Below, in pieces: positions 1-45,906 of a stretch of DNA of 64,000 nt. This DNA is from Guillardia theta CCMP2712 (Eukaryota > Protista > Cryptophyta), in NCBI RefSeq assembly GCF_000315625.1, contig NW_005434612.1, forward strand, positions 62,001 through 126,000, in the 5' to 3' direction. The notes under the pieces were generated by a model. The model saw nothing but the letters and a program-made list of their open reading frames with translations. It ran no database searches and had not been told where the DNA came from. The translations under genes and the position numbers were made by a program. Within the stretch, counting starts at the first letter, position 1; each line of letters starts with the position of its first letter.

Positions 1-27
1 GTCAAGAACTGATGTGATCATTGGCAG

Positions 28-3000
28 ACACCCTCTCTACCTTCAAGTGTGTCACAGTGGAAGATACCACACCTGATAAAGGGCGCATGTTAGAAAGTTC
101 GATCAGTAATTACTCTTTCTTGACAGCGATCGGGGAGCTTTTTGATAACTCGATACAACATGTACTCTGCAACCAATATGACAAGAACAAAACTATCAAA
201 GTTACACTCGACTTCCAAAGGGGCACTTTTCATCTTGTGGACAATGGAATAGGCTGCTCAGACCCCAAGGAAATGCTTCAGTATGGGTCAAAGCGCGCAT
301 CTACGCAGGAGCTGTACGACGAGGGTTGCACATCGTTCAGGAGATATCTGAGCGGTACCTTCTCTCGATATGGCGTGGGGGCCAAAAATGCTTGTAATGC
401 CCTTGGGACAAGACATGTTGTGAGCAGTAAGACGCGAGACAGCAGAACTGTGCAAGTAGTGGAAGACTCAACCTTATCGGCTTGGAAAGCAATTAGATGC
501 ATCAGGTCTCTCCAGGAGGGCGAAGACGTCGCGTCGAGCTTCTGCAAGATCGACATAGAAGGCTTCAAGATTGATTTCTTTATCAGCGATGGAGCTTTCT
601 CTGCGGCAGCTCTCAGGCACTGCCTGAGCAACATCCGAGCGATGTACTACATGTACCTTGAAGGAGAGCAGGCAGGCGCGAAGAGGTTTGTAGACCAGGT
701 GCTGAGGCTGATAGATCAGCCAAATGCAGAGATGAGACGACGCGGACGGATCGCAAACGCAAAAAAATTTTATCAACACGACCTGAGCTGCTTGAGGACG
801 ATGCTGAACAAATATCTTGTTGAGTCTGGCTCTATGTCGGAGCAGATTGACCTGGAGTTCGAGGTGATCCATCAAGACTCTGCTAGCTCGGCCCCTCCGC
901 ATCGACTAGCAGACTCGATGTGCTGCCTTGACCGAGTGCTGAGCGACGACGCCAGGGACTGCTTCCCCATCTACGTCGAGATCCCCGACCATGCAGACCC
1001 CACCAAGCGCTCGATCGCTACGGGGGCGATATTCTACTTTCCGAACCAGGGCAACAAGGACACAGTCCCGTACGTTGACGAGCTGCATGGGCACTCAAGC
1101 TCATTGGATCGCCGCTTCATGGTGTTCTGGATGGGACGATGGCTTCCTGAAGAAGATTTCGTACCAGGTTTCATGAGATACCGTGAGGGGGATAAGCCGC
1201 TTGCCCCGCAGCGATGCTATGCAAGGACTTTCGGCATTCTTTTTGTAGACCGAGGGATCGAGCCAGAGGCAAACAAGCTGGCCCTGAGCAAGTCTGCTCC
1301 AAATGTAAAGAAGATGAAGGAGGCGATTGACTCGAAGGACCTTGCAAAAGCATATGATTACTGGCTCAAAGAATGTCACCTCAAGTTTGATGCAGAGGTC
1401 TCCTTCGAAGACGAAAACCCAAAGTACATAGATGCTGAAGGAATGTCTCAGCACGACAAGATCATATTCTGCGACAATGTGTATAAGGTGGGTGAATTCG
1501 TCGAGCTGTACAAAGAGTCAAAGGAGAAAGCAAAGATTGAAAGTCATATAGGAAGGATCGAGAGGTTCTTGCAAGATAAGCACTTTGACCTGCACTTGCC
1601 AACAGGGGAGGTCGAGCTTCTTCTATTGGCTTCAGACAACAGCATGACGAAGCATAATCGCTTCAGAATACAAAACTATTCCATGAGGCCCCTCAGCAAC
1701 AAAGAGTTCGAGGCTACCAGAGCAAAGAATGAGAAGCAGATAGTCAGATCAGTCGCTATCGAGTTCCGCAACCACATCGTGAAGGCTGGCATGTTACCGC
1801 TTACAAGGGTTGTCTGCAAGAACTCAAACAACGAAGTCATTCAGACAAACATCCCGATCTTCAAGGTCACAGTGGCGTCACAAGATTGCTTGGAAAGCTT
1901 CGAAGTGTCTAATGGGCTTCTGTCTTCTCCTGAAAAGATAGTGCCCAATGGGCATCTGTCTTTTCCTGACAAGATAGTGAAGAAGCTCGCGACTGTCGCA
2001 GGCCGGTATACGATTTCCCTTGAGCCAGCTGCAGGTCAGACGCCGTTCACGTGCGAGCCCGCGACGTTCTACATCACCCCAGCAGAGATGCACAAGGTAT
2101 CGCTCAGACCAAACACTCCGAGCATCCATTGTGAGCTCGGGCAAACGACCTCCTTAGAAGTACAGGTGCACGACAAATACAACAATAGCATCGATCTCCA
2201 ACTCGGCGTCCACACGCTTGACATTCTGGTAGACGAGGCTCGGGCTCTAGATGTCTCGCTATCCTTCACGCCTGAGTACGCTGGGAGCATCAGGATCCAA
2301 GACCTCTGCGTGCTTCATGGGGGCGTCGGGACGTATCCTGCTCGCATAGTCATCACAGACATTCATCAGCAGAAGGTCGTTGAGCACAAAATCTCGATCA
2401 AAGTCCAGCATGGGCAGCCATCGTCCATACAGTGCGACGCTGACTGGGAGGAGTATATCAACTACCAACAGCTCGGGCCAGTCGACGTCAGCATTCAAGA
2501 CGCGAGCGGGAACATGTGCGACGGAAACCAAGGCAAGCTCGTGGTGATGAGCCCGGACCTCCTGCTTCACGGCGAGAGCCAGCGGAATGAAAACAAGATA
2601 AGGAAAGGGAGATGTCGCCTGACCTGCTCGTGTGCGAGCTCTTTGTTCTCGAATGGTACGGCAACAGCTCAGACGGTAGTCAGTGAAGCAGAAATGGGTC
2701 GATGGAGAGAAATGATACTCAAGCAAGTCGCTCCGGTCGGGGTATTTCACAGGGAGCATGGCTTCTTTCAAACAGGGGATTGTGTATTGCTCATCACGGA
2801 GCAAGAATTGGGCGTTGGAGCACGTCGTAAGACAAGGCCTAAGGTTCGGTTGTTTGGACAGATCAAGTCTATTTTCAATGATGAGCAATCTTCGGAGACT
2901 GGAATCTATGTTGAGTACTTCTCGGAGAGCAGTGATCATCCTCGCTTACTCTTACACAACGAAGCGCCAGATGCTGAAAGGCTCAATCCAGAAGCCATCT

Positions 3001-6000
3001 CGAGTCGTTGCCTTGTGTTTCACGATTCCCTCCGGCACACTTTGGATCTTGATGTGATGGCAGACAATGTGTTCTTCTGCAACTCCGACGAGTTTCCCCG
3101 GAGCCTTCAAGCGACTTTAGATGTCATCCACGAGACCGAGACGACGATCTTGCATCAGAGGTTCTCACGTCCCCTGAAGCCGAGCGGAACTCCGAGGCGC
3201 ATGAAGCTCTTCCAATCAGGAGTCGAGTTGGCTCTCAACAATGCAGCAGTGTCGTTCAACGCACGGCACAACGACAAGATATCAGACTTGTACCTTGTGG
3301 CTGCTGACGAGACAAACCAGCCCTGCCAGCACTTTGCGGACGGCAGGTCAAACTTGAAAGTAGAAATGAGCTGGATGAATGCACAGCTGCCAGTCTATGA
3401 AGCCGGTCGGGATCAAGTCTTTGCACTGCCTCCGTTGCACGTACGATCTAATTCCAAGCAGACCATCTCGGTCTTCTCCTGTGCAGGCTCGAAGCAGACG
3501 AAGACAGAGGAGACGCGACTGTTTCAGTACCAACTTGACGTCCTGGTGACCCCCGGAGAGCCTGAGAAGCTGAAGATTTCTCTACCACAAGACATCTCTG
3601 GTATCAAAGCAGGAGACTTGTTCACGTTGGAAGGAGTCATAGTGGATCGAGATGGATACGACATCGAACCGATAACTAACCAACATCCTGACGAAATATC
3701 TTCGTTCAGTTTCACGTGCGAAGATGGGTTTGAGGTTCCGGTCACTTTATATGACAACTACCACAATGTGGTAGAAGGCAAAGATGCCCTTGGGAACATC
3801 ACGATCAAAGGCTCTAAGATCACTGTAAGGAATGCTTTCATTCGCTGTAAACCCTCCAAGGGCACGCTCAAGCTTGGGCTGAAGCTCAACGTGAAAACAG
3901 GTATAGGTGGCACAAAGTCTTACAACTTGAAGCCCATCGAGCTGGACTTGGACCTGAAAGCTGGTGATCCGTGCAAGATATGCGTACAGCCAGACTGCCA
4001 AGCGTTCGTCAACCTCTCGGTCCCCAGCATGGCGGAGTACGAATGTGACATCAGGTTCATCGTTACAGACAGTGTGGACAACAACTTGTCAGCCGCATGG
4101 GATCAGCCGCTGATGCTGCAGGTAGGCAAACAGAGCAGGAGGCTTGAAAAAGTATCAGATGAATCAAGGGGAGATGCTTTCAAGCTCAGCACAATTCCAG
4201 CCCTTCCAGCAGGAGAGTATTTTCCTAAAATCATTTCGCGGAGTATATCGAGTTTCACCTTCAATGTCATCGCCACTGCTAGGAACTCCGTCATTCAGAT
4301 CGCGATGACGGTGAAAGACCGACAGAAACATCTTGAGTACGCACAAGGCTCAGCGCTTGCAGCAGCAGACTTCGAAGCTTTGATCCAACTCCACACCGAA
4401 GACCAAAGAAAGCTCGACGACTGGTCTACGAGTACCATGCCGGATGTGAGGCTGTACTGTGAAAAGCAGAGGATACCCATGTCGTACAAGACCTTCGACG
4501 GCAACTGCGTACACGTCATCTTCTCTCTCAGCGAGATCGGGAGTCATCAGGTCTCGGCTGAGTTTGTCGACTCGAGACCCTCGTATGCAGGACCTCCGAT
4601 CGCTTCCAAGCCTTGTAACGTGGTGGTGAAGTCAGGTAAGAGACGCTGTCTGCTTGACATGATTGTCCGCTTGTATCTCACGCCATTGCTACAGGACCTG
4701 TAGAGCAGCTGGACTTGCAGCTTCATGCTCCTGCGACTGACGACCCTCTTCAGTGTGGCTTCACGCTCGCTGCATGTGACCGGGCGTCTCGAAAGACAAA
4801 CTATCATCCCACGAGCGAGTGGGAGGCTACAGTGGTGGCACGGGTGCTGGAGGACCATCTCGTCCGGATAGAGACCAATGCTGTAACCCTCAACGCTCTT
4901 CATCCCACGGTCAATGGAACCTTCACGCTCGTGCCTCAGCGACAAGAGCAGCAAGAGTCATGCGCTTGTACGCTTGTGTTTAACGTGCAGAGCAACATTG
5001 CCATAAGGTCGTTGGATCAGCGAACGATGAACGTGACGCTTCCTGCTGCATCTGCTGGCGTGCACGATGACACTGCAATCAATGACAACGAGAACGAGGA
5101 GGTGCAGGAGGCGAGCAGAGCCAACATCGCCTTCGAGGAACAGCCGGTGATTATCGAAGACGACACAGAAGAAGAGGAGAAGCTCAGGGTCGAGGTACAA
5201 ACATCCATGTGCCATCAAAACATCGAGAACGCTATTGCAAGGCTCCTCAAGCGACAGGATGTCTCTCCTGCTATCCAATCTTACTACGTCGATATCGCAG
5301 CAACTTCGGACTTGGGGAAGCTGAAGCGAGACTGTGAGAGGTTTCAAACAGGCATCAGGAATCACAATGCAGAGCTGACCGAGCGGTTCAAGGACTTCAA
5401 GAACAAGTATGATGATCTTCCACACAAGATGGAGTTGACAGATGTCGAAATTCCTGCGAGCTGCAAGGACGCTTTAGGGTGTATTTCCTCCTTGTTCTCC
5501 ATCGACCATCCTCGGGCAGCAGACATTCAGACGGCCTTGTCGACAGCTTTCGGCGAGGACCTCAACTCCGTCATCTTCCAGAGCGACGGAGACTTGGATG
5601 AGCAGATGGACGGCATCTGCTGTCAGTCCAAGTGTCGAGTCAAGAGCGCTTGCCTGGTAGAGCAGGACAGGTTGCCCGAGGACGTCGAGGAGTCTCGCGG
5701 GGCCCTGGGACGAGCCGACAGCTTCATCGTCCTCAACAAGTCTCGTGATGCAGAGACAGACAGGAAGCTGCTCTCCTTCGCCGAGCGATTCTTCAGGAGG
5801 CTCGTCGTCTTCGAGCAGTCGGATGATGCCATCCGCTACCGCACACGCTCCATGCTTCGAGGCGAGATGGTGGTGGGACTGGACCGACCGAACAAGGTCA
5901 TTTCATGGGACGGGAGCCAGACGCTGCTGGACAAGCAAGTGAGGTGTGCAAGGATGGGCATCGTCGAGTACTGGAGAGCCAAAGCATACAAGGAGCTGCA

Positions 6001-36862: not shown

Positions 36863-39800
36863 TTACTTTTTGTTCCTGCCTGTGCCATCCATTTTCTTCT
36901 TCTTTGTGACTTGCGTCTCTTTGTCCTAATGAAATACCATCACATCGCGTCAGTCATCGGACTTTCTAACCTCATCGTCTCCTCGCTTTCGACTTCTTGA
37001 TGTTTGCTGCTGTGGCTGATGTTTTTCTTCCTTTGCTGCAGTGGCGTGAGATACAAGCGGACAATCATGTCAAGCAGAAAGTGTCTCTTACCTGACTTCA
37101 CCAGCACGTCACAAGGCTTGGAAGCGATCGGAGGTCCTGCATACGAGGGTCTCGAGTCGACAAACTCAGCCGAGACCTGATGACTCCCGATCTCGCTGAG
37201 AGAGAAGGTGACGTGTACGCAGTTGCCGTCGAAGGTCTTGTACGACATGGGTATCCTCTGCTTTTCACAGTACAGCCTCACATCCGGCATGGTACTCGTA
37301 GACCAGTCGTCGAGCTTTCTTTGGTCTTCGGTGTGGAGTTGGATCAAAGCTTCGAAGTCTGCTGCTGCAAGAGCTGAGCCTTGTGCGTACTCAAGATGTT
37401 TCTGTCGGTCTTTCACCGTCATCGCGATCTGAATGACGGAGTTCCTAGCAGTGACGATGACATTGAAGGTGAACATCTGTACTCGTTTTGACAAGATTTT
37501 AGGGAAATACTCTCCAGCTGGAAGGGCTGGAATCGTGCTGAGCTTGAAAGCATCTCCCCTTGACTCATCTGATACTTTCTCAAGCTCCCTGCTCTGTTTG
37601 CCTACCTGCAGTATCAGCGGCTGATCCCATGCGGCTGACAAGTTGTTGTCCACACTGTCTGTAACGATGAACCTGATGTCACATTCGTACTCCGCCATGC
37701 TGGGGACCGAGAGGTTGACGAACGCTTGGCAGTCTGGCTGTACGCATATCTTGTACGGATCACCAGCTTTCAGGTCCAAGTCCAGCTCGATGGGCTTCAA
37801 GTTGTAACACTTTGTGCCACCTATACCTGTTTTCACGTTGAGCTTCAGCCCAAGCTTGAGCGTGCCCTTGGAGGGTTTACAGCGAATGAAAGCATTCCTT
37901 ACAGTGATCTTAGAGCCTTTGATCGTGATGTTCCTAAGGGCATCTTTGCCTTCTACCACTTTGCGGAAGTCGTCAGATAAAGTGACCGGGACCTCAAACC
38001 CATCTTCGCACGTGAAAGTGAACGAAGATATTTCGTCAGGATGTTGGTTAGTTATCGGTTCGATGTCGTATCCATCTCGATCCACTATGACTCCTTCCAA
38101 CGTGAACAAGTCTCCTGCTTTGATGCAAGAGGTGTTTCGTGGTAGAGAAATCTTCAGCTTCTCAGGCTCTCCGGGGGTTACCAGGACGTCAAGTTGGTAC
38201 TGAAACAGTCGCGTCTCCTCTGTCTTCGTCTGCTTCGAGCCTGCACAGGAGAAGACCGAGATGGTCTGCTTGGAATTAGATCGTACGTGCAACGGAGGCA
38301 GTGCAAAGACTTGTTCCTGACCGGCTTCATAGACTGGCAGCTGTGCATTCATCCAGCTCATTTCTACTTTCAAGTTTGACCTGCCGTCCGCAAAGTGCTG
38401 GCAGGGCTGGTTTGTCTCGTCAGCAGCCACAAGGTACAAATCTGATATCTTGTCGTTGTGCCGTGCGTTGAACGACACTGCTGCATTGTTGAGAGCCAAC
38501 TCGACTCCTGATCGGAAGAGCTTCATGCGCCTGGGAGTTCCGCTCGGCTTCAGGGGACGTGAGAACCTCTGATGCAAGATCGTCGTCTCGGTCTCGTGGA
38601 TGACATCTAAAGTCGCTTGAAGGCTCCGGGGAAACTCGTCGGAGTTGCAGAAGAACACATTGTCTGCCATCACATCAAGATCCAAAGTGTGCCGGAGGGA
38701 ATCGTGAAACACAAGGCAACGACCCGAGATGGCTTCTGGATTGAGCCTTTCAGCATCAGGTGCTTCGTTGTGTAAGAGTAAGCGAGGATGATCACTGCTC
38801 TCCGAGAAGTATTCAACATAGATTTCAGTCTCCGAAGATTGCTCGAAAATAGACTTGATCTGTCCAAACAACCGAACCTTAGGCCTTGTCTTACGACGTG
38901 CTCCAACGCCCAATTCTTGCTCCGCGATGAGCAATACACAATCCCCTGTTTGAAAGAAGCCATGCTCCCTGTGAAATACCCCGACCGGAGCGACTTGCTT
39001 GAGTATCATTTCTCTCCATCGACCCACGTCTGCCACGTCTGCTTCACTGACTACCGTCTGAGCTGTTGCCGTACCATTCGAGAACAAAGAGCTCGCACAC
39101 GAGCAGGTCAGGCGACATCTCCCTTTCCTTATCTTGTTTTCATTCCGCTGGCTCTCGCCGTGAAGCAGGAGGTCCGGGCTCATCACCACGAGCTTGCCTT
39201 GGTTTCCGTCGCACATGTTCCCGCTCGCGTCTTGAATGCTGACGTCGACTGGCCCGAGCTGTTGGTAGTTGATATACTCCTCCCAGTCAGCGTCGCACTG
39301 TATGGACGATGGCTGCCCATGCTGGACTTTGATCGAGACATTGAGCTCAACGACCTTCTGCTGATGAATGTCTGTGATGACTATGCGAGCAGGATACGTC
39401 CCGACGCCCCCATGAAGCACGCAGAGGTCTTGGATCCTTATGCTCCCAGCGTACTCAGGCGTGAAGGATAGCGAGACATCTTGAGCCCGAGCCTTGTCTA
39501 CCAGAATGTCAAGCGTGTGGACGCCGAGCTGGAGATCGATGCTATTGTTGTATTTGTCGTGCACCTGTACTTCTAAGGAGGTCGTTTGCCCGAGCTCACA
39601 ATGGATGCTCGGAGTGTCTGGTCTGAGCGATACCTTGTGCATCTCTGCTGGGGTGATGTAGAACGTCTCGGGCTCGCACGTGAACGGCGTCTGACCTGCA
39701 GCTGGCTCGAGGGACATCGTATACTGGCCTGCGACAGTCGCGAGCTTCTTCACTATCTTGTCAGGAAAAGACAGATGCCCATTGGACACTTCGAAGCTTT

Positions 39801-42800
39801 CCGAGCAATCTTGTGACGCCACTGTGACCTTGATCGGGATGTTTGTTTGAATAACTTCGCTATTTGAGTTCTTGCAGATAAACCTTGTAGTCGGTAACAA
39901 GCCAGCCTTCATGATGTGGTTGCGGAACTCGATAGCGACTGATCTGACTATCTGCTTCTCGTTCTTTGCTCTGGTAGCCTCGAACTCTTTGTTGCTGAGA
40001 GGCCTCATGGAATAGTTTTGTATTCTGAAGCGATTTGTTTTCGTCATGCTGTTGTCTGAAGCCAATAGAAGAAGCTCGACCTCCCCTGTTGGCAAGTTCA
40101 AGTCAAAGTGCTTATCTTGCAAGAACCTCTCGATCCTTCCAACGTGACTTTGAATCCTTGCTTTCTCCTTTGATTCTTTGTACAGCTCGACAATATCTCC
40201 GACTTGATATACATCATTCAAGAATATAATTCTGTCGTGCTGAGACATTCCTTCAGCATCTATGTACCTTGGGTTTTCGTCTTCGAAGGAGACCTCTGCG
40301 TCAAACTTGAGGTGACATTGTTTGAGCCAGTAATCGTATGCTTTTGCGAGGTCCTTCGAGTCAAGTGCATCTTGTAATTTCCTCATTTTGGTTTTGCCCA
40401 TGTTGAATGACCATTTGCTTGCCTCTGGCTCGATCCCTCGGTCTACAAAAAGAAGGCCGAAAGTCCTTGCATAGCATCGCTGCGGGGCAAGCGTCTTATC
40501 CCCCTCACGGTATCTCATGAAGCCAGGAACATAATGCTCCCCTGGAAGCCATCGTCCCATCCAGAACACCATGAAGCGGCGATCCAACGAGGTTGAGTGC
40601 CCATGCAGCTCGTCAACGTACGGGACTGTGTCCTTGTTGCCCTGGTTCGGAAAGTAGAATATCGCCCCCGTCGCGATCGAGCGCTTGGTGGGGTCAGAAT
40701 CGTCGGGGATCTCGACGTAGATGGGGAAGCAGTCCTTGGCGTCGTCGCTCAGCACTCGGTCAAGGCAGCACGTCGAGTCTGCAAGTCGATGCGGAGGGGC
40801 CGAGCTAGCAGAGCCTTGATGGATCCACTCGAACTCCAGGTCAATCTGCTCCGACATAGAGCCAGACTGGTCTCTACATTGCTTCAGCATCGTCTTCAAG
40901 CGGCTCATATCTTCATGAAACCTGTGTTCCCTTTGTGGTTTACGACCCGTTCGCTTCCCATCTACACTCGGCTGGTCTATCAGCCTCAGCACCTGGTCCA
41001 CAAACCTCTTCGCGCCTGCCTGCTCTCCTTCAAGGTACATGTAGTACATCGCTCGGATGTTGCTCAGGCAGAGCTTGAGAGCTGCCGCAGAGAAAGCTCC
41101 ATCGCTGGTAAAGAAATCAACCTTGAAGCCTTCTATGTCGATCTTGCAGAAGCTCGACGCGACGTCTTCGCCTTCCTGGAGAGACCTGATGCATCTAATT
41201 GCTTTCCAAGCCGATAAGGTTGAGTCTTCCACTACTTGCACAGTTCTGCTGTCTCGCGTCTTACTGCTCACAACATGTCTTGTTCCAAGGGCATTGCAAG
41301 CATTTTTCGCCCCCACGCCATATCGAGAAAAGGTACCGCTCAAATATCTCCTGAACGATGTGCAACCCTCGTCGTACAGCTCCTGCGTAGATGCGCGCTT
41401 TGACCCACATTGAAGCATTTCCTTGGGGTCTGAGCAGCCTATTCCATTGTCCACAAGATGAAAAGTGCCCCTTTGGAAGTTGAGTGTAACTTTGATAGTT
41501 TTGTTCTTGTCATATTGGTTGCAGAGTACACGTTGTATCGAGTTATCAAAAAGCTCCCCGATCGCTGTCAAGAAAGAGTAATTACTGATCAAACTTTCTA
41601 AAAAACGCATCCTGTCAAGTTTGATGTTGATGGTTGGCCTGTCTTTGAGATCACGGCAGAGGTCTGTTGGCTGAACGTCAGTTTTTGTTTTCGCAATGAA
41701 TCTTGTCTACAACACTTGCCTTCAGAAACCAGCACAAACTTTTTTCCTTCTTCATCGTCCATATCGAAGTCCGGTGAAGTAGCCTCCGAAAGGTCAGGTG
41801 ATGTTCGCAGCCTCCGTCCCTGATTGAGATTAAATCACGCCCGTCGTGGAGATCATTACGTACTGAAGTAGACTCATGTAGATTCATCTGTTCTTTCAAA
41901 TGCCCAATGAGTTGCTGGACGTCTTTGAATCGCCTCATCTCATCCAGACTCAGTCGGATGGGAGTACTGCAAATGAAACGATGAGAATACAATAAAATTG
42001 GAAGCAACAACCTCAAAAGTTTGTCCGTTTTGACCGCTTTGATAATGTTGTCATCAATCTGAGCCTCGATCACGGCCTTTTTTATGTCTGTCTCTGTATC
42101 GATCATTTCCGTTTTGACCACTTGCAACTTCATCTCAAGATCTAAGGCCGCAATATCATTTTTGTCACGAAAGATGATCAAAATGCCAATTGTACGACTG
42201 GAAGTCTCGAAACTTTCATTTATGCGAATGAGTTGAATTTTGCTATCATAAACATCTTTTGGCAGGGCAAGAGGCTTATCCTCATCGCCTACTGCATGCT
42301 CCAGAAAAGATACGGTCCCATCTTTGAAGCATCTCTGCCAGTCTCCACGACGATGGAGTGCATCATCTACTTCTGCGACATCGTAGATTCTCCTCTTCGC
42401 ACATGATAAGAGTTGCTTACAGCTTTCATCCATGAGGTCAGGATTCAAAACACCCTTCATTTTCAATTTAGATGAAATTGAAACATAATTGATGTAATCG
42501 CCAAGATCTGGCAAGTTTCCATCAATTGCCATCCTCTCTGCTGTTCGGATACATTCATAGAAATGATCAGGCATTGAAGATGATATTGATTCTATGAGAG
42601 TCGGGAATACTCCAACATCAAACATTATGCTTTCCCGAGTAATCTGATCTGCACCACACTCTTCCAACTTTGCCTCCGCAAATAATTGAAATATTCGAAC
42701 TGTTGAGTTCAAACTATTACTCACTCGTTCGAAGTATTTTGACTTTTTTTCGTGGAACCGCCCCAAAATCGCGATTCCTCTGTATTTCATCGACATTGCT

Positions 42801-42811
42801 TCATGATAGTC
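36863..42811 (-). CDS. Hinge-less SMCHD1-like GHKL ATPase paralog with extended N-terminus
   Basis: 37038-41600 is a high-identity inverted copy of 90-4689. ORF 41678..42841 splices in frame through introns 41820-41863 (GT-AG) and 41664-41719 (GC-AG). 3' introns 37036-37091 and 36926-36970 give a short basic tail ending KKKKMDGTGRNKK*. Confidence 0.8.
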
Positions 42812-43351
42812 CTGGAGAGATATGTTAAAAAAGAAGCCCACTCAAAACATTCTACCCTTATCTACATGATCTTTATCATTCTAAAATTCTTTTCGATCGT
42901 CACTCCGAAGAAACCTTGAAATCTTTGGGAAAGTCTATCTAATTTGACGTGTCAAAAGCCAATGCATTTCTTGTTGAACGTATGCAAAACATTCTCAAGC
43001 ATAGAAGCTGCAAAGAGGTGCATGCGCTCAAATCTTTCGTCCAATCTTGACACACCTGGTCTTCCAATTTCATCTTGAAAGTCTCTTTGTAGTCCTGAAG
43101 TCACTATGAGAGAAGAGACTAATTGATTGGGAAGTTATACCAGCTTGTTCTCCATTAGTGTAGTTGAGTATGGAAAAGAACTAAGGCTTTCCGGACAAAA
43201 AATAGATTCAATTATGCGACACAGTTGTAAACTTTAGATCATCAAACACTAACCTTTCGACTTCAGGGTTTTCTTGCTTGATGGTAATAGACATATATTT
43301 TGTAAAATCTTGCGTGCTATCTGCAATAACAATTATCACAAAGAATAAGTT

Positions 43352-45103
43352 TCACTTTATCACACCTAGAGTGATCAATTGTTGCCATGGAACAAACCTA
43401 AATTCTGGACAATCAAGAGCATTCTGTAGCTGTTCATTCATTTTCTTGACCCAACTCTGTTTCGACTTCCGCCAGTCATAATCATATTCTCGTTGTCCAA
43501 TCGTCCACCCCATATTGCTAACCCACGTATCAAAACTGAGAGGGGAAGCTTCTATTTTGAAGTCAGTCTTAGTTTTGACAATGAGACTGCCTTGTAGCTG
43601 TTGATTGTATAAGAAAGCTTCAAAGAAAATGCTGCTGATCTTTGTCATTCTAAACAAGACCACATAGCTTCCCGATTCCAAAGCTTTTTCCAAGATCCTG
43701 AAGGAGAGTAAAGGATGACCAGATTCTGAAGAGCCTAAGAGGCGAAATTTGTTAAGGAAAGCTTCAGCTTCATCGAGAATCTGTGCTTTTGACTTCTCCC
43801 TTTTATGAGGATAGCTCATTATTGTGTCCCAATATTCCATCAATGTGCTTTGAGATTCAATGTTTTGTTGCCCGATCTCCTTTTTAACTGTGTAATTCAC
43901 TATATTGATTATCAGACATCTTTCTACATTTTCATCCGACAAGTCGCAGTCGTTTTCTTCTTGCCACTTGCGAAAGGATACAGAGGAAATCTTTCTTGCT
44001 TTGAAATGTTTCTCGACCAGGCTAAAGAGACTCTCACCGAGATGTCCACCGAACGAAGCAACGTAATTCCGTACCATATCATCTAAGTACTCTGTGTCAT
44101 CGTATCTCAAAAACAAGAGCAGGAATAGTGAACAAATCCTCCATTTACAATTGGCACCATCAGCCAATGAGTGAGAGGATTTCATAAATTCTTCGATAAT
44201 GTTCTTCAAGTCCTTTTGGAAATGTTCAATGTGGTTTGAGGAATGACCAACTACAATCGCCTCTGCAATTTTTCCTGTTGCCTCAGTTGCTTGAAACCTG
44301 GATAGTTCTTGATTTGAAATGTTTTTTTCCAGAGCGGTGCTGATGCAATTCAAGAGCTGGGGTGTTCTGCCATTCTCAACGATACGCAGATCACTAGCAA
44401 TCTTATAACGATTGAATTCAGAAACATTTTCGCAATGGTTTGCAGCATGATCCAGCACTTCCTTCAATTCATTATTGATTCCAAAAACTCCTTTTATGTC
44501 ATGCATCAAGTATTTCATGAACTCTGAATCATCAAAAGTCTTTGAACCACTCGGGCATGTCATGTACAACGCCCATTGTTTCAGCTGAATATCCTCTGTG
44601 GGTTTACTGGGTTGTTCGACATTGTAGCCAGCCTTCACTGGAAAGTTCTCTATGATTTTCCTACAAGCATCGAAGATGATCAGCAGCCTTGCTTTGGAAT
44701 CCTTCTTGAAGGCTTCAGACCAAAATCTCAGAGCACTGCTGATGGAAAGTGCGCAAATATCTATAGAACCCAAGGAACTTAGATCGTCATTGCTGCAGTC
44801 TCCAGGAATCATGTAGACCTCTCCCGTTGGAAGTTGGGCGCCATGCCCAGCATAGAACAAAATGACTTGCTGTGGTGAATCTCTACTGAGATCTTTGAAA
44901 CCAGATCGCAGAAATCGTCCTAAATCAGCTGTATTCTGCACGTCAAGGTTCAACATTGATCTACAACGCTCAGCTTTGGATAACCTCTCATGGAATTCCC
45001 GAGCATCTCTGGCCGCACTCCTCAGCTTATCAAACTGTTTGTACTTGTCGATTCCTATGCACAATGCACCGACCTTCAATCGATCAGGCTGACTGTTCTG
45101 CAT
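43352..45103 (-). CDS. Caspase-like (peptidase C14) protease domain plus helical region; probably the 5' part of a longer spliced gene
   Basis: ALCIGIDKY...LRSAARDA, ILFYAGHG (catalytic His) and IIFDACR (catalytic Cys). Intron 43321-43365 removes the ORF stop and continues DSTQDFTKY... Confidence 0.85.
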   Translation of the reverse strand: MQNSQPDRLKVGALCIGIDKYKQFDKLRSAARDAREFHERLSKAERCRSMLNLDVQNTADLGRFLRSGFKDLSRDSPQQVILFYAGHGAQLPTGEVYMIPGDCSNDDLSSLGSIDICALSISSALRFWSEAFKKDSKARLLIIFDACRKIIENFPVKAGYNVEQPSKPTEDIQLKQWALYMTCPSGSKTFDDSEFMKYLMHDIKGVFGINNELKEVLDHAANHCENVSEFNRYKIASDLRIVENGRTPQLLNCISTALEKNISNQELSRFQATEATGKIAEAIVVGHSSNHIEHFQKDLKNIIEEFMKSSHSLADGANCKWRICSLFLLLFLRYDDTEYLDDMVRNYVASFGGHLGESLFSLVEKHFKARKISSVSFRKWQEENDCDLSDENVERCLIINIVNYTVKKEIGQQNIESQSTLMEYWDTIMSYPHKREKSKAQILDEAEAFLNKFRLLGSSESGHPLLSFRILEKALESGSYVVLFRMTKISSIFFEAFLYNQQLQGSLIVKTKTDFKIEASPLSFDTWVSNMGWTIGQREYDYDWRKSKQSWVKKMNEQLQNALDCPEFRFVPWQQLITLGVIK

Positions 45104-45306
45104 ACTCTCTTGAACTATGCCTGGTTGGAGGCTCTCATGACACCATGTGCCCAGCCCCGGGCATGGCTCTTACTGTCACAGCTGGGGAAAAAATAAGAAG
45201 AGCAGTGTGGTAAATATAAAACCAAGCCCACCTCAGGTATGTAAGTAATGAACATGACAAGACATCTACATACCCTATCTGATGCCTGACCTATTTACAC
45301 GTTGAT

Positions 45307-45906
45307 ATGGAGCCGATCACCCGTCGCCATCTTCGACCCGCTCATCGCTCGCCAACCACAACCAGGCTGGTCATCGATCCTGTCTTCCTCTCCAAGGTCA
45401 AGTCCTTGGCTGAGGCCTCCGATGGCCTCTTCCTTGCACAATCGGAGGCTGGTGACCCACAGTATGTACGCTGGCGAGATGCGATGGCAGACCCGACGCT
45501 GGAGAGCACGATCTGCTGGGCGAAGATCAAGAACGCCACCCGAGCTATCGAGAAGCTCGTGCGGTCCTACGACTTCTGCGTCTACAAGCTCTTAGATGTG
45601 GTACGACAGTCTATCATCTTCAAGGACCTCGACCATCTGTGCGACTGCCTGGACAAGATTGCCAGGGACCCGGAGATCGAAGTTGTACGAATCAAGAACA
45701 GGCTGGATCCAGACTTCGACAGCAAGATATCGGGGGGCTACCGAGACATTGGGATAAACCTGCGCATCGTCAGCACCCAGACGAAGAAGGAGGGAGTGGA
45801 GGGGCATATCTGCGAGCTCCAGCTTCTGCTTGAAGACTTCCACAAGCTCAAAACCCTCGAAGGGCACAAACGGCACGTGCAGTTCCGAAACCTCCGATGC
45901 GAGTGA
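45307..45906 (+). CDS. Stand-alone RelA/SpoT-like nucleotidyltransferase ORF (199 aa), chimeric copy of the 3' domain of the 47833-51617 gene
   Basis: Motifs KIKNATRAIEK, LLDVVR, VRIKNR, GGYRDIGIN and HICELQL are intact. The ATG comes from unrelated upstream DNA. It could be an unexpressed fragment. Confidence 0.6.
   Translation: MEPITRRHLRPAHRSPTTTRLVIDPVFLSKVKSLAEASDGLFLAQSEAGDPQYVRWRDAMADPTLESTICWAKIKNATRAIEKLVRSYDFCVYKLLDVVRQSIIFKDLDHLCDCLDKIARDPEIEVVRIKNRLDPDFDSKISGGYRDIGINLRIVSTQTKKEGVEGHICELQLLLEDFHKLKTLEGHKRHVQFRNLRCE

What the first reader, a model, noticed from the sequence alone, without database searches (positions are those of the whole stretch)
36863..45103. Probable caspase-GHKL fusion: SMCHD1-like ATPase that lost its hinge and gained a protease
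Seen: ORF 41678..42841 splices cleanly into the GHKL exon. The last intron is phase 1 and sits at the same position as the acceptor at base 27 of copy 1. The caspase ORF has an intron removing its stop and continues toward it on the same strand. Identity to copy 1 ends inside the intron before the hinge exon, which is replaced by two small exons with a basic NLS-like tail. I could not find a complete in-frame splice path across about 42812-43100, so the fusion is unproven. Known: GHKL domains dimerise on ATP binding and caspase-family proteases are often activated by dimerisation. Inference: an ATP- or ligand-gated nuclear protease.
Basis: partly seen in the sequence, partly recalled or inferred. 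Interest (0 to 1): 0.75.

Follow-up and report, generated by a model that had tools for sequence, protein, structure and literature searches.

The report
Expressed caspase–SMCHD1-like ATPase fusion gene
In the alga Guillardia theta, spliced RNA joins a caspase-like protease and an SMCHD1-type chromatin ATPase that lacks its hinge into one reading frame of about 2,500 codons, a combination I found nowhere else and whose function is untested.

Summary
RNA-derived contigs from two separate studies remove seven introns (six GT-AG, one GC-AG) on the minus strand. They link the caspase ORF (43352-45103), three micro-exons, the 'middle' ORF and the GHKL ORF. With those introns removed, the frame from ATG 45103 stays open for 2,538 codons.

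The head is a caspase fold closest to MALT1 (Z 21.4), with the His/Cys dyad present. The body is SMCHD1-type (profile hit to 6mw7, E 5.5e-39). It has no hinge, which the unfused paralogs do have.

- The fusion junction lies inside exon 5 (about 42071-42124), not at 41601. Exons 6-7 are the SMCHD1-like gene's own N-terminal exons.
- The 94% identity block 41601-37038 is a gene-conversion tract.

The caspase half is a paralog of a caspase-headed GREB1-like gene (GUITHDRAFT_146844), which this scan noted earlier elsewhere in the same genome.

I found no caspase-plus-GHKL protein among 150 caspase relatives or 8 SMCHD1-like relatives. The public gene model here is a 216-aa fragment. The ATP-gated protease mechanism and the two small 3' exons remain untested.

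The parts
43366..45103 (-). Exon 1 coding part (aa 1-580), starting at ATG 45103: caspase-like domain plus an alpha/beta 'helical' domain shared by about 30 paralogs
   Evidence: ORF. Pfam C14. The X1 RNA contig reaches 45149 with no upstream ATG in frame. About 30 paralogs in the genome. AF2 model pLDDT 84.4.
44375..45094 (-). Caspase fold proper (aa 4-243). Catalytic His87 is at 44843-44845 (AGHG) and Cys147 at 44663-44665 (DACR).
   Evidence: VIA-align Z 21.4, rmsd 2.9, 207 residues aligned to MALT1 3v4o; caspase-9 Z 18.5. Foldseek MALT1 E 2.8e-8. His87 is invariant and Cys147 is present in 8 of 9 paralogs.
43321..43365 (-). Intron 1 (45 nt, GT-AG). It removes the stop codon of the caspase ORF (43352-43354).
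   Evidence: Joint 43320/43366 in X1 and X2. Splice ends.
43056..43320 (-). Three micro-exons (43254-43320, 43141-43186, 43056-43094) separated by introns 43187-43253 and 43095-43140
   Evidence: Joints in X1 and X2. GT-AG ends. In frame.
42812..43055 (-).
   Evidence: Joint 42810/43055 (cut +1) in X1 and X2. Splice ends.
42012..42811 (-). Exon 5 (800 nt, aa 631-897). The middle domain (42125-42661) is homologous to aa 681-845 of the caspase-GREB1-like protein GUITHDRAFT_146844. The last ~20-25 codons are the start of the SMCHD1-like N-terminus.
   Evidence: tblastn and BLASTP. Homology to Hanusia phi P0005 starts at window 42070. AF2 model of the exon is poor (pLDDT 59.6) and has no fold match.
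42071..42124 (-). Interval that holds the inferred fusion junction (aa ~860-878). It lies between the end of the middle-domain homology and the start of the SMCHD1-like N-terminal homology.
   Evidence: P0005 begins with Met at the aligned position.
41664..42011 (-). Exons 6 (41864-41966) and 7 (41720-41819) with introns 41967-42011, 41820-41863 and 41664-41719 (GC-AG, phase 1). These are the SMCHD1-like gene's own N-terminal exons.
   Evidence: Joints in X1 and X2. Homologous exons lie upstream of copy 1 (L019 5731-5829, 5864-5978), copy 3 and the C54 paralog. Donor and acceptor are homologous to copy 1.
37092..41663 (-). Exon 8: GHKL ATPase (41227-41580), S5 transducer (40309-40746) and about 1,100 further residues with no Pfam family
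   Evidence: Pfam. Family profile hits SMCHD1 6mw7 at E 5.5e-39. Bergerat motif residues E19/N23, D54-G58 and G98/G100 are conserved.
37038..41601 (-). Gene-conversion tract shared with copies 1 and 3 (94% DNA identity, mosaic dS)
   Evidence: blastn. dS varies from 0.02 to 0.32 between 200-codon blocks. Flanking N-terminal exons are only 33-42% identical in protein.
36864..37091 (-). 3' end, not tested with reads. A conserved donor at 37091 and an acceptor ending at 37036 would give a short basic tail. A possible second 45-nt intron (36927-36973) would move the stop to about 36864. Without splicing, the stop is at 36940-36942. No version has a hinge.
   Evidence: Alignment of the three copies. 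Frame calculation. The hinge ORF of copy 1 has no match elsewhere in the window.

Best explanation
Window 45149 to about 36864 (minus strand) is one gene of at least 8 exons. Its mRNA encodes a chimeric protein of about 2,520-2,540 residues. In order, the protein has: a caspase-fold protease domain with the His/Cys dyad; a family-specific alpha/beta domain; a linker from three micro-exons; a middle domain shared with the caspase-headed GREB1-like gene; and then a complete SMCHD1-like N-terminal region, GHKL ATPase, S5 transducer and long C-terminal body. It has no SMC hinge.

Origin (inferred): a caspase-headed gene was joined, inside what is now exon 5, to the first coding exon of a neighbouring SMCHD1-like paralog. 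The large exon was later homogenised with two unfused neighbours by gene conversion.

Mechanism (inferred, not shown): the hinge normally holds SMCHD1 as a dimer, so without it the protein would be monomeric until ATP and probably DNA drive the GHKL heads together. That would bring two N-terminal caspase-like domains together and switch them on by proximity, as in MALT1 and initiator caspases. I put the gene structure at about 0.9 and this mechanism at about 0.3. The stated confidence is a blend of the two.
For: Shown:
- One 3,700-nt contig of run X1 covers 40903-45149 with seven introns removed and no other differences. Run X2, from another study, shows the same seven joints. Run X6 keeps the introns, so it is DNA.
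- All seven introns have GT/GC..AG ends on the minus strand.
- The joined frame is open from ATG 45103 for 2,538 codons.
- The caspase fold matches MALT1 at Z 21.4, and the dyad is conserved.
- The body is SMCHD1-type, with ATP-binding motif residues conserved.
- The hinge region is present in paralogs (C54 at 24.5 bits, above the cut-off; copy 1 weak at E 0.034; present in P0001-P0004) but absent here.
- dN/dS is 0.20 for the caspase half against an environmental relative. It is 0.45-0.50 for the ATPase half, the same as between the two unfused copies.

From the literature: DNA binding next to the ATPase stimulates SMCHD1 ATP hydrolysis, and the N-terminal region forms dimers (bioRxiv 10.64898/2026.02.05.704097).
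Against: - Contigs cannot prove that one RNA molecule spans the whole gene. No read covered the 3' 2.7 kb specifically, because its k-mers are shared with paralogs.
- The only raw-read RNA run laid (X11) gave 4 reads.
- No protein evidence exists.
- Only one species shows the fusion. A 95%-identical environmental contig carries a frameshift and a gap of about 0.9 kb at this locus.
- Protease activity, ATPase activity, dimerisation and localisation are all untested.
- Gene conversion confounds the dN/dS of the ATPase half.
Confidence: 0.6

Rival explanations
1. A young chimeric gene with no selected function of its own. It would be an accident of deletion between two tandem genes, transcribed and still open, but neutral or on its way to decay.
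For: - The fusion appears in one species only. Four Hanusia phi SMCHD1-like proteins and two G. theta paralogs lack C14.
- Hanusia P0005 starts with Met at the junction.
- An environmental relative (L029, 95% nt identity) has a frameshift after aa ~473 and lacks about 0.9 kb between 43433 and 42532.
- The intactness of the ATPase half could be maintained by gene conversion from functional neighbours.
Against: - The frame is open for 2,538 codons across seven splice junctions.
- It is expressed in two studies.
- dN/dS is 0.20 over 460 codons of the caspase half.
- The catalytic dyad and ATP-binding motifs are intact.
- L029 is a single metagenome contig and may be misassembled.
Confidence: 0.2
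2. Two proteins in practice. The main products would be a stand-alone caspase-headed protein and a stand-alone SMCHD1-like ATPase made from an internal start. The fused contig would then be a minor read-through isoform or an assembly join.
For: - Contigs do not show single molecules (caveat).
- ATG 41610 opens a 1,556-codon ORF.
- The public annotation has only a 216-aa caspase model here.
Against: - The introns that link the parts are removed in both RNA runs, and no unspliced RNA contig was seen.
- The caspase ORF's stop lies inside an intron.
- Exons 5-7 have no stop in frame and are themselves SMCHD1-like coding sequence, so a start at 41610 would drop conserved N-terminal exons.
- X2 contig depths are similar across the parts, 11.5 to 15.6.
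Confidence: 0.1
3. The caspase-like domain acts in cis or as a scaffold rather than as a gated effector. It might cut its own linker to release the SMCHD1-like part, or only mediate protein contacts, as MALT1 does when scaffolding.
For: - A long, low-complexity, micro-exon-encoded linker follows the head.
- Caspase-family zymogens commonly self-process (general knowledge).
- One paralog of the family has lost the catalytic Cys (L005), which shows the module can persist without catalysis.
Against: The dyad is intact in this copy. No cleavage site or processed product is known. Nothing was tested.
Confidence: 0.1

Closest known systems
SMCHD1 (animals) and GMI1-type SMCHD1-like GHKL ATPases
   Same: It has the GHKL ATPase plus the SMCHD1-type S5 transducer (PF22899). 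The family profile hits human SMCHD1 6mw7 at E 5.5e-39. A long body follows the ATPase. Unfused paralogs in the same genome carry an SMC-hinge-like C-terminus.
   Different: This copy has no hinge. About 880 residues of caspase-headed sequence precede the N-terminus. BAH and Ig-like domains were not detected by Pfam.
MALT1 paracaspase and initiator caspases (caspase-9, CED-3), which are proteases activated by dimerisation
   Same: MALT1 is the best structural match over the whole catalytic domain (Z 21.4). Caspase-9 scores 18.5 and CED-3 17.2. The His/Cys dyad sits in the usual strands.
   Different: Sequence identity is only 13-20%. There is no death domain, CARD or Ig3 domain. The nearest predicted structures are bacterial caspase-family proteins. 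Specificity and activation mode are unknown.
GUITHDRAFT_146844, the caspase-headed GREB1-like protein of G. theta (2,974 aa)
   Same: It has the same head (25% identity over 550 residues) and the same middle domain at the same distance from the head (aa 681-845). It is annotated as a single protein.
   Different: Its body is a circularly permuted SF2 helicase plus a TAGT glycosyltransferase, not a GHKL ATPase. No trace of that body remains in this window.
Metacaspase-like proteases / orthocaspases of phytoplankton and bacteria (Choi and Berges 2013, PMC3734836)
   Same: The p20-type Pfam match covers only profile positions 4-131. No recognisable p10 sequence motif was found. That paper reports this class in G. 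theta.
   Different: The predicted fold here covers a complete caspase domain. The protein is about 2,500 residues long with an ATPase body. The passages I searched in that paper describe no such architecture.

Membership tests
Peptidase C14 (caspase/paracaspase/metacaspase superfamily) | Sequence match to the family profile above the curated cut-off | tested here: met
   PF00656 at 41.3 bits against a cut-off of 21.4, residues 13-157. PADLOC caspase model E 2.5e-10.
Peptidase C14 (caspase/paracaspase/metacaspase superfamily) | Caspase-haemoglobinase fold | tested here: met
   AF2 model pLDDT 84.4. Z 21.4 to MALT1 and 18.5 to caspase-9 over residues 4-243.
Peptidase C14 (caspase/paracaspase/metacaspase superfamily) | Catalytic His and Cys after strands 3 and 4 | tested here: met
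   His87 (AGHG) is invariant. Cys147 (DACR) is present here and in 8 of 9 paralogs. The strand positions fit the model.
Peptidase C14 (caspase/paracaspase/metacaspase superfamily) | Proteolytic activity and P1 specificity | not testable with these tools
   Needs enzyme assays.
SMCHD1 family | GHKL (Bergerat-fold) ATPase with motif I Glu/Asn, DxGxG and the Gly-rich lid | tested here: met
   PF13589 at 27.4 bits against a cut-off of 25. E19, N23, D54, G56, G58, G98 and G100 are invariant or nearly invariant in the family alignment.
SMCHD1 family | SMCHD1-type S5 transducer domain and closest solved relative | tested here: met
   PF22899 at 51 bits against a cut-off of 27. Profile hit to 6mw7 at E 5.5e-39, with the next hit (HtpG) at 1.8e-4.
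SMCHD1 family | C-terminal SMC hinge domain | tested here: not met
   No hinge follows exon 8 and there is no match in the window outside copy 1. Paralogs have it: C54 at 24.5 bits, above the cut-off; copy 1 weak at E 0.034; the homologous region is present in P0001-P0004. I therefore file this copy as SMCHD1-like, not as a full member.
SMCHD1 family | N-terminal ubiquitin-like domain before the ATPase | tested here: inconclusive
   The N-terminal exons are homologous to those of unfused paralogs.
SMCHD1 family | BAH and Ig-like DNA-binding domains after the transducer | tested here: inconclusive
   No Pfam family matched residues 470-1556 even at E 10. No structure was predicted.
GREB1-like (cpSF2 helicase + TAGT) | Circularly permuted SF2 helicase and TAGT glycosyltransferase | tested here: not met
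   Both are present in the sister gene. tblastn of that body against the whole window finds only the middle domain.
MACPF / pore-forming domain (lead for the middle exon) | MACPF/CDC fold | tested here: not met
   The lead came from language-model features only (score 0.95, low recognition). The AF2 model has pLDDT 59.6. The best Foldseek match is E 0.03 and the best VIA Z is 4.3, neither to a MACPF protein. The model is weak, so this is not a firm exclusion.
HisKin-conflict (PF22561), weak hit after the caspase domain | Profile match above the cut-off, shared by family members | tested here: not met
   18.7 bits against a cut-off of 27, in only 1 of 9 paralogs.

The most novel reading that the evidence does not exclude
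G. theta carries a repertoire of 'caspase-headed' proteins. In these, one protease-plus-adaptor module (about 30 copies) is wired to interchangeable sensor or enzyme bodies. The bodies include an SMCHD1-like DNA clamp here and a GREB1-like helicase/glycosyltransferase. Neighbouring ORFs suggest protein kinase/ARM, ADP-ribosyltransferase/ankyrin and NACHT/WD40 bodies as well. Under this reading, the locus is a nucleic-acid-sensing immune or cell-death switch in which chromatin-type ATPases act as the receptors for a caspase-like executioner.
Probability: 0.2. Interest if true: 0.85.

Novelty: new variant of a known kind. Interest (0 to 1): 0.6.

Why it matters
SMCHD1 and MORC-type GHKL ATPases are known as chromatin silencers and DNA clamps. 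Caspase-fold proteases are known as switches activated by proximity. A natural protein that hard-wires the two, and at the same time lacks the hinge that normally dimerises SMCHD1, would be a ready-made test of two questions. Can ATP-driven GHKL dimerisation serve as a signalling switch? Do algae use caspase-like domains as effectors downstream of nucleic-acid sensing? It also shows a concrete route by which such architectures arise: a tandem-gene join inside an exon, followed by gene conversion from unfused neighbours. Finally, it corrects a public annotation that records only a 216-aa fragment here.

Tried and rejected
- **Fusion breakpoint at 41601.** I first took the 41601 identity boundary for the fusion breakpoint. 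Searches rejected this, because exons 6-7 and the end of exon 5 are SMCHD1-like N-terminal coding sequence.
- **HisKin-conflict domain after the caspase.** The hit is below threshold and occurs in 1 of 9 paralogs.
- **MACPF-like middle domain.** No structural support, although the model is poor.
- **Word search with the caspase exon.** It found nothing. The word search with GUITHDRAFT_146844 residues 590-1000 found only that protein itself.
- **Language-model search of residues 270-579.** Scores were 0.83 or lower, so it is uninformative. That domain remains unassigned.
- **Literature.** Searches for a caspase/GHKL or caspase/SMCHD1 architecture found no description.
- **Hinge status of Hanusia P0005 and P0006.** It could not be judged, because their C-termini look like read-through into the retained intron.
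- **PADLOC.** It gave nothing for the middle exon or the ATPase body.
Full report
**What is there**

The window is contig C62:62001-126000 of an 87-Mb eukaryotic assembly. Paralogs and the local public model carry Guillardia theta CCMP2712 names.

Three long ORFs lie head to tail on the minus strand:
- 43352-45103 (583 aa): Peptidase_C14, 41.3 bits against a cut-off of 21.4.
- 41678-42841 (387 aa): no Pfam family.
- 36940-41610 (1,556 aa): HATPase_c_3 plus SMCHD1_S5.

A 91%-identical paralog, 'copy 1', starts at window 21. A third copy lies about 15 kb upstream of the window on the other strand.

**Transcript evidence**

- Run X1 holds a 3,700-nt contig that covers 40903-45149 with no base differences and seven segments skipped.
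- Run X2, from a different study, shows the same seven joints.
- Run X6 covers 41561-43742 unbroken, so it is genomic DNA.
- Every skipped segment has GT..AG ends on the minus strand, or GC..AG in one case.

The introns are 43321-43365, 43187-43253, 43095-43140, 42812-43055, 41967-42011, 41820-41863 and 41664-41719.

With these removed, the frame that starts at ATG 45103 runs 2,538 codons to the stop at 36940-36942. 45103 is the first ATG in the contig, and stop codons lie in frame upstream of it. The first intron removes the caspase ORF's stop codon.

Contigs cannot prove single molecules. Even so, seven canonical junctions that all keep one frame open, seen in two studies, make a single coding transcript by far the simplest reading.

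The joined model was never handed to a database search tool. Pfam, PADLOC, PDB, atlas, word, representative and structure searches were all done exon by exon, by reference. Inside my own scripts I used the joined translation to test the frame. I also used it for local BLAST against proteins and loci already fetched.

**The head**

An AlphaFold model of exon 1, built on 49 aligned sequences, has pLDDT 84.4 and pTM 0.83.
- Residues 4-243 match MALT1 paracaspase at Z 21.4 (rmsd 2.9, 207 residues), then caspase-9, caspase-4 and CED-3. Foldseek agrees.
- The nearest predicted structures are bacterial caspase-family proteins.
- His87 (AGHG) is invariant in nine paralogs. Cys147 (DACR) is present here.
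- Residues 270-579 form a mixed alpha/beta domain that I could not assign.

**The body**

A profile of ten family members hits the solved N-terminal region of human SMCHD1 (6mw7) at E 5.5e-39. The next hit, HtpG, is at 1.8e-4. The ATP-binding motif residues are conserved.

The hinge is missing here.
- The ORF that follows the large exon in copy 1 has no counterpart elsewhere in the window.
- The same region is present in four relatives.
- It reaches the SMC_hinge cut-off in the C54 paralog and gives a weak hit in copy 1.

**Where the two halves meet**

DNA identity to copies 1 and 3 covers only 41601-37038. That is not the junction.
- Exons 6 and 7 and the last 20-25 codons of exon 5 are homologous to the N-terminal exons found upstream of copy 1, copy 3 and the C54 paralog.
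- They are also homologous to the first 110 residues of Hanusia phi P0005, which begins with Met at the aligned position.
- The middle-domain homology to GUITHDRAFT_146844 ends near aa 860.

So the join lies at about 42071-42124, inside exon 5.

The 94% block is a conversion tract. dS swings from 0.02 to 0.32 between 200-codon blocks in all three pairwise comparisons. The flanking exons are only 33-42% identical in protein.

**Family context**

The head plus its second domain occurs about 30 times in the genome and in Hanusia phi.
- On contig C136 it precedes the middle domain, a circularly permuted SF2 helicase and a TAGT glycosyltransferase. This is publicly annotated as one 2,974-aa protein.
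- Elsewhere, same-strand neighbours encode protein kinase/ARM, ADP-ribosyltransferase/ankyrin, and ART in a tandem array.
- The second domain also sits in ORFs with NACHT/WD40 and CHAT/ankyrin.
- Apart from C136, I did not test whether these neighbours are spliced to the head.

**Is the combination found elsewhere?**

- None of the 150 best representatives of the caspase family, out of 1.84 billion proteins searched, contains an SMCHD1-like ATPase.
- None of the eight SMCHD1-like relatives from the word search carries C14.
- Of the eight full-length SMCHD1-like paralogs, this is the only one with a caspase-family match beside it; the sole other shared contig, C52, holds the two about 250 kb apart.
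- I found no paper describing it.
- These searches are limited: only the top 150 of 11,894 hits were inspected.
- The public model at this locus is a 216-aa fragment, GUITHDRAFT_112792.

**Constraint**

Over 460 codons of the head, dN/dS against a 95%-identical environmental contig is 0.20. That contig also has a frameshift after about residue 473. It lacks about 0.9 kb between 43433 and 42532. It is either a decayed allele or a misassembly.

The ATPase half shows dN/dS of 0.45-0.50, the same as between the two unfused copies. Conversion confounds this figure.

**How it most likely works**

Shown: one expressed open frame; an intact dyad on a caspase fold closest to proteases activated by dimerisation; intact ATP-binding motifs; and no hinge.

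From the literature: DNA binding next to the ATPase stimulates SMCHD1 ATP hydrolysis, and the N-terminal region forms dimers.

Inferred: without the hinge, dimerisation would depend on ATP and DNA at the GHKL heads. It would bring the two protease domains together and switch them on. I rate this at about 0.3.

The rivals are a neutral young chimera (0.2), two proteins in practice (0.1), and a cis-acting or scaffold head (0.1).

**Not tested**

- The two small 3' exons and the basic tail. Only the conserved donor at 37091 and the frames are known.
- The fold of the SMCHD1-like N-terminus and of the 1,100-residue body.
- Any biochemical activity.

Noticed in passing
L029 (ENA metagenome contig, 2,333 nt), matching window 45258-43584, 43493-43433 and 42532-41952: This is an environmental relative, 95% identical in DNA. 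It links the caspase ORF and the middle exon, but has a frameshift after aa ~473 and lacks about 0.9 kb (micro-exons and the start of exon 5). It keeps intron 41967-42011, so it is DNA. It is either a decayed allele or a misassembly.
   Followed up: partly
G000 C97:155000-232000 (L004, L005, L007-L010, L022, L023): A tandem array of about ten caspase-headed ORFs spaced 12-13 kb apart. In L022, the one copy examined, the caspase ORF is followed on the same strand by a 434-aa ORF and an ADP-ribosyltransferase (ART) ORF. One copy (L005) has Gly in place of the catalytic Cys.
   Followed up: partly
G000 C51 (L024), C64 (L026), C4 (L027), C118 (L028): Other family members sit next to, or inside, ORFs with protein kinase + LRRK2-type ARM, ART + ankyrin, CHAT + ankyrin, and NACHT + pentapeptide + WD40. 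Splicing between them was not tested.
   Followed up: partly
window 21-4703, 36940-41610 and L020 387-5027: The three SMCHD1-like copies on this contig show block-wise dS from 0.02 to 0.35. Different blocks are most similar in different pairs, which is the signature of repeated gene conversion.
   Followed up: partly
window 41601: In runs X2 and X6, a contig matches up to 41601 and then continues for 255 unrelated letters. This is as expected for a paralog contig that diverges at the conversion boundary.
   Followed up: no
window 41664-43365: Four of the seven introns are 44-46 nt long, and one uses a GC donor. The same GC/GT donor position is conserved in copy 1 as GT.
   Followed up: partly
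window 45297-45500: A separate RNA-run contig (X1 record 5, depth 164) covers the start of the head-to-head neighbour ORF 45307-45906. That gene is therefore expressed, from a shared promoter region of about 200 nt.
   Followed up: no
L018 (G000 C280:26497-29586): A third homologue of the middle domain opens a 1,030-aa ORF with no caspase-family match on that contig; I did not look at what lies upstream.
   Followed up: no
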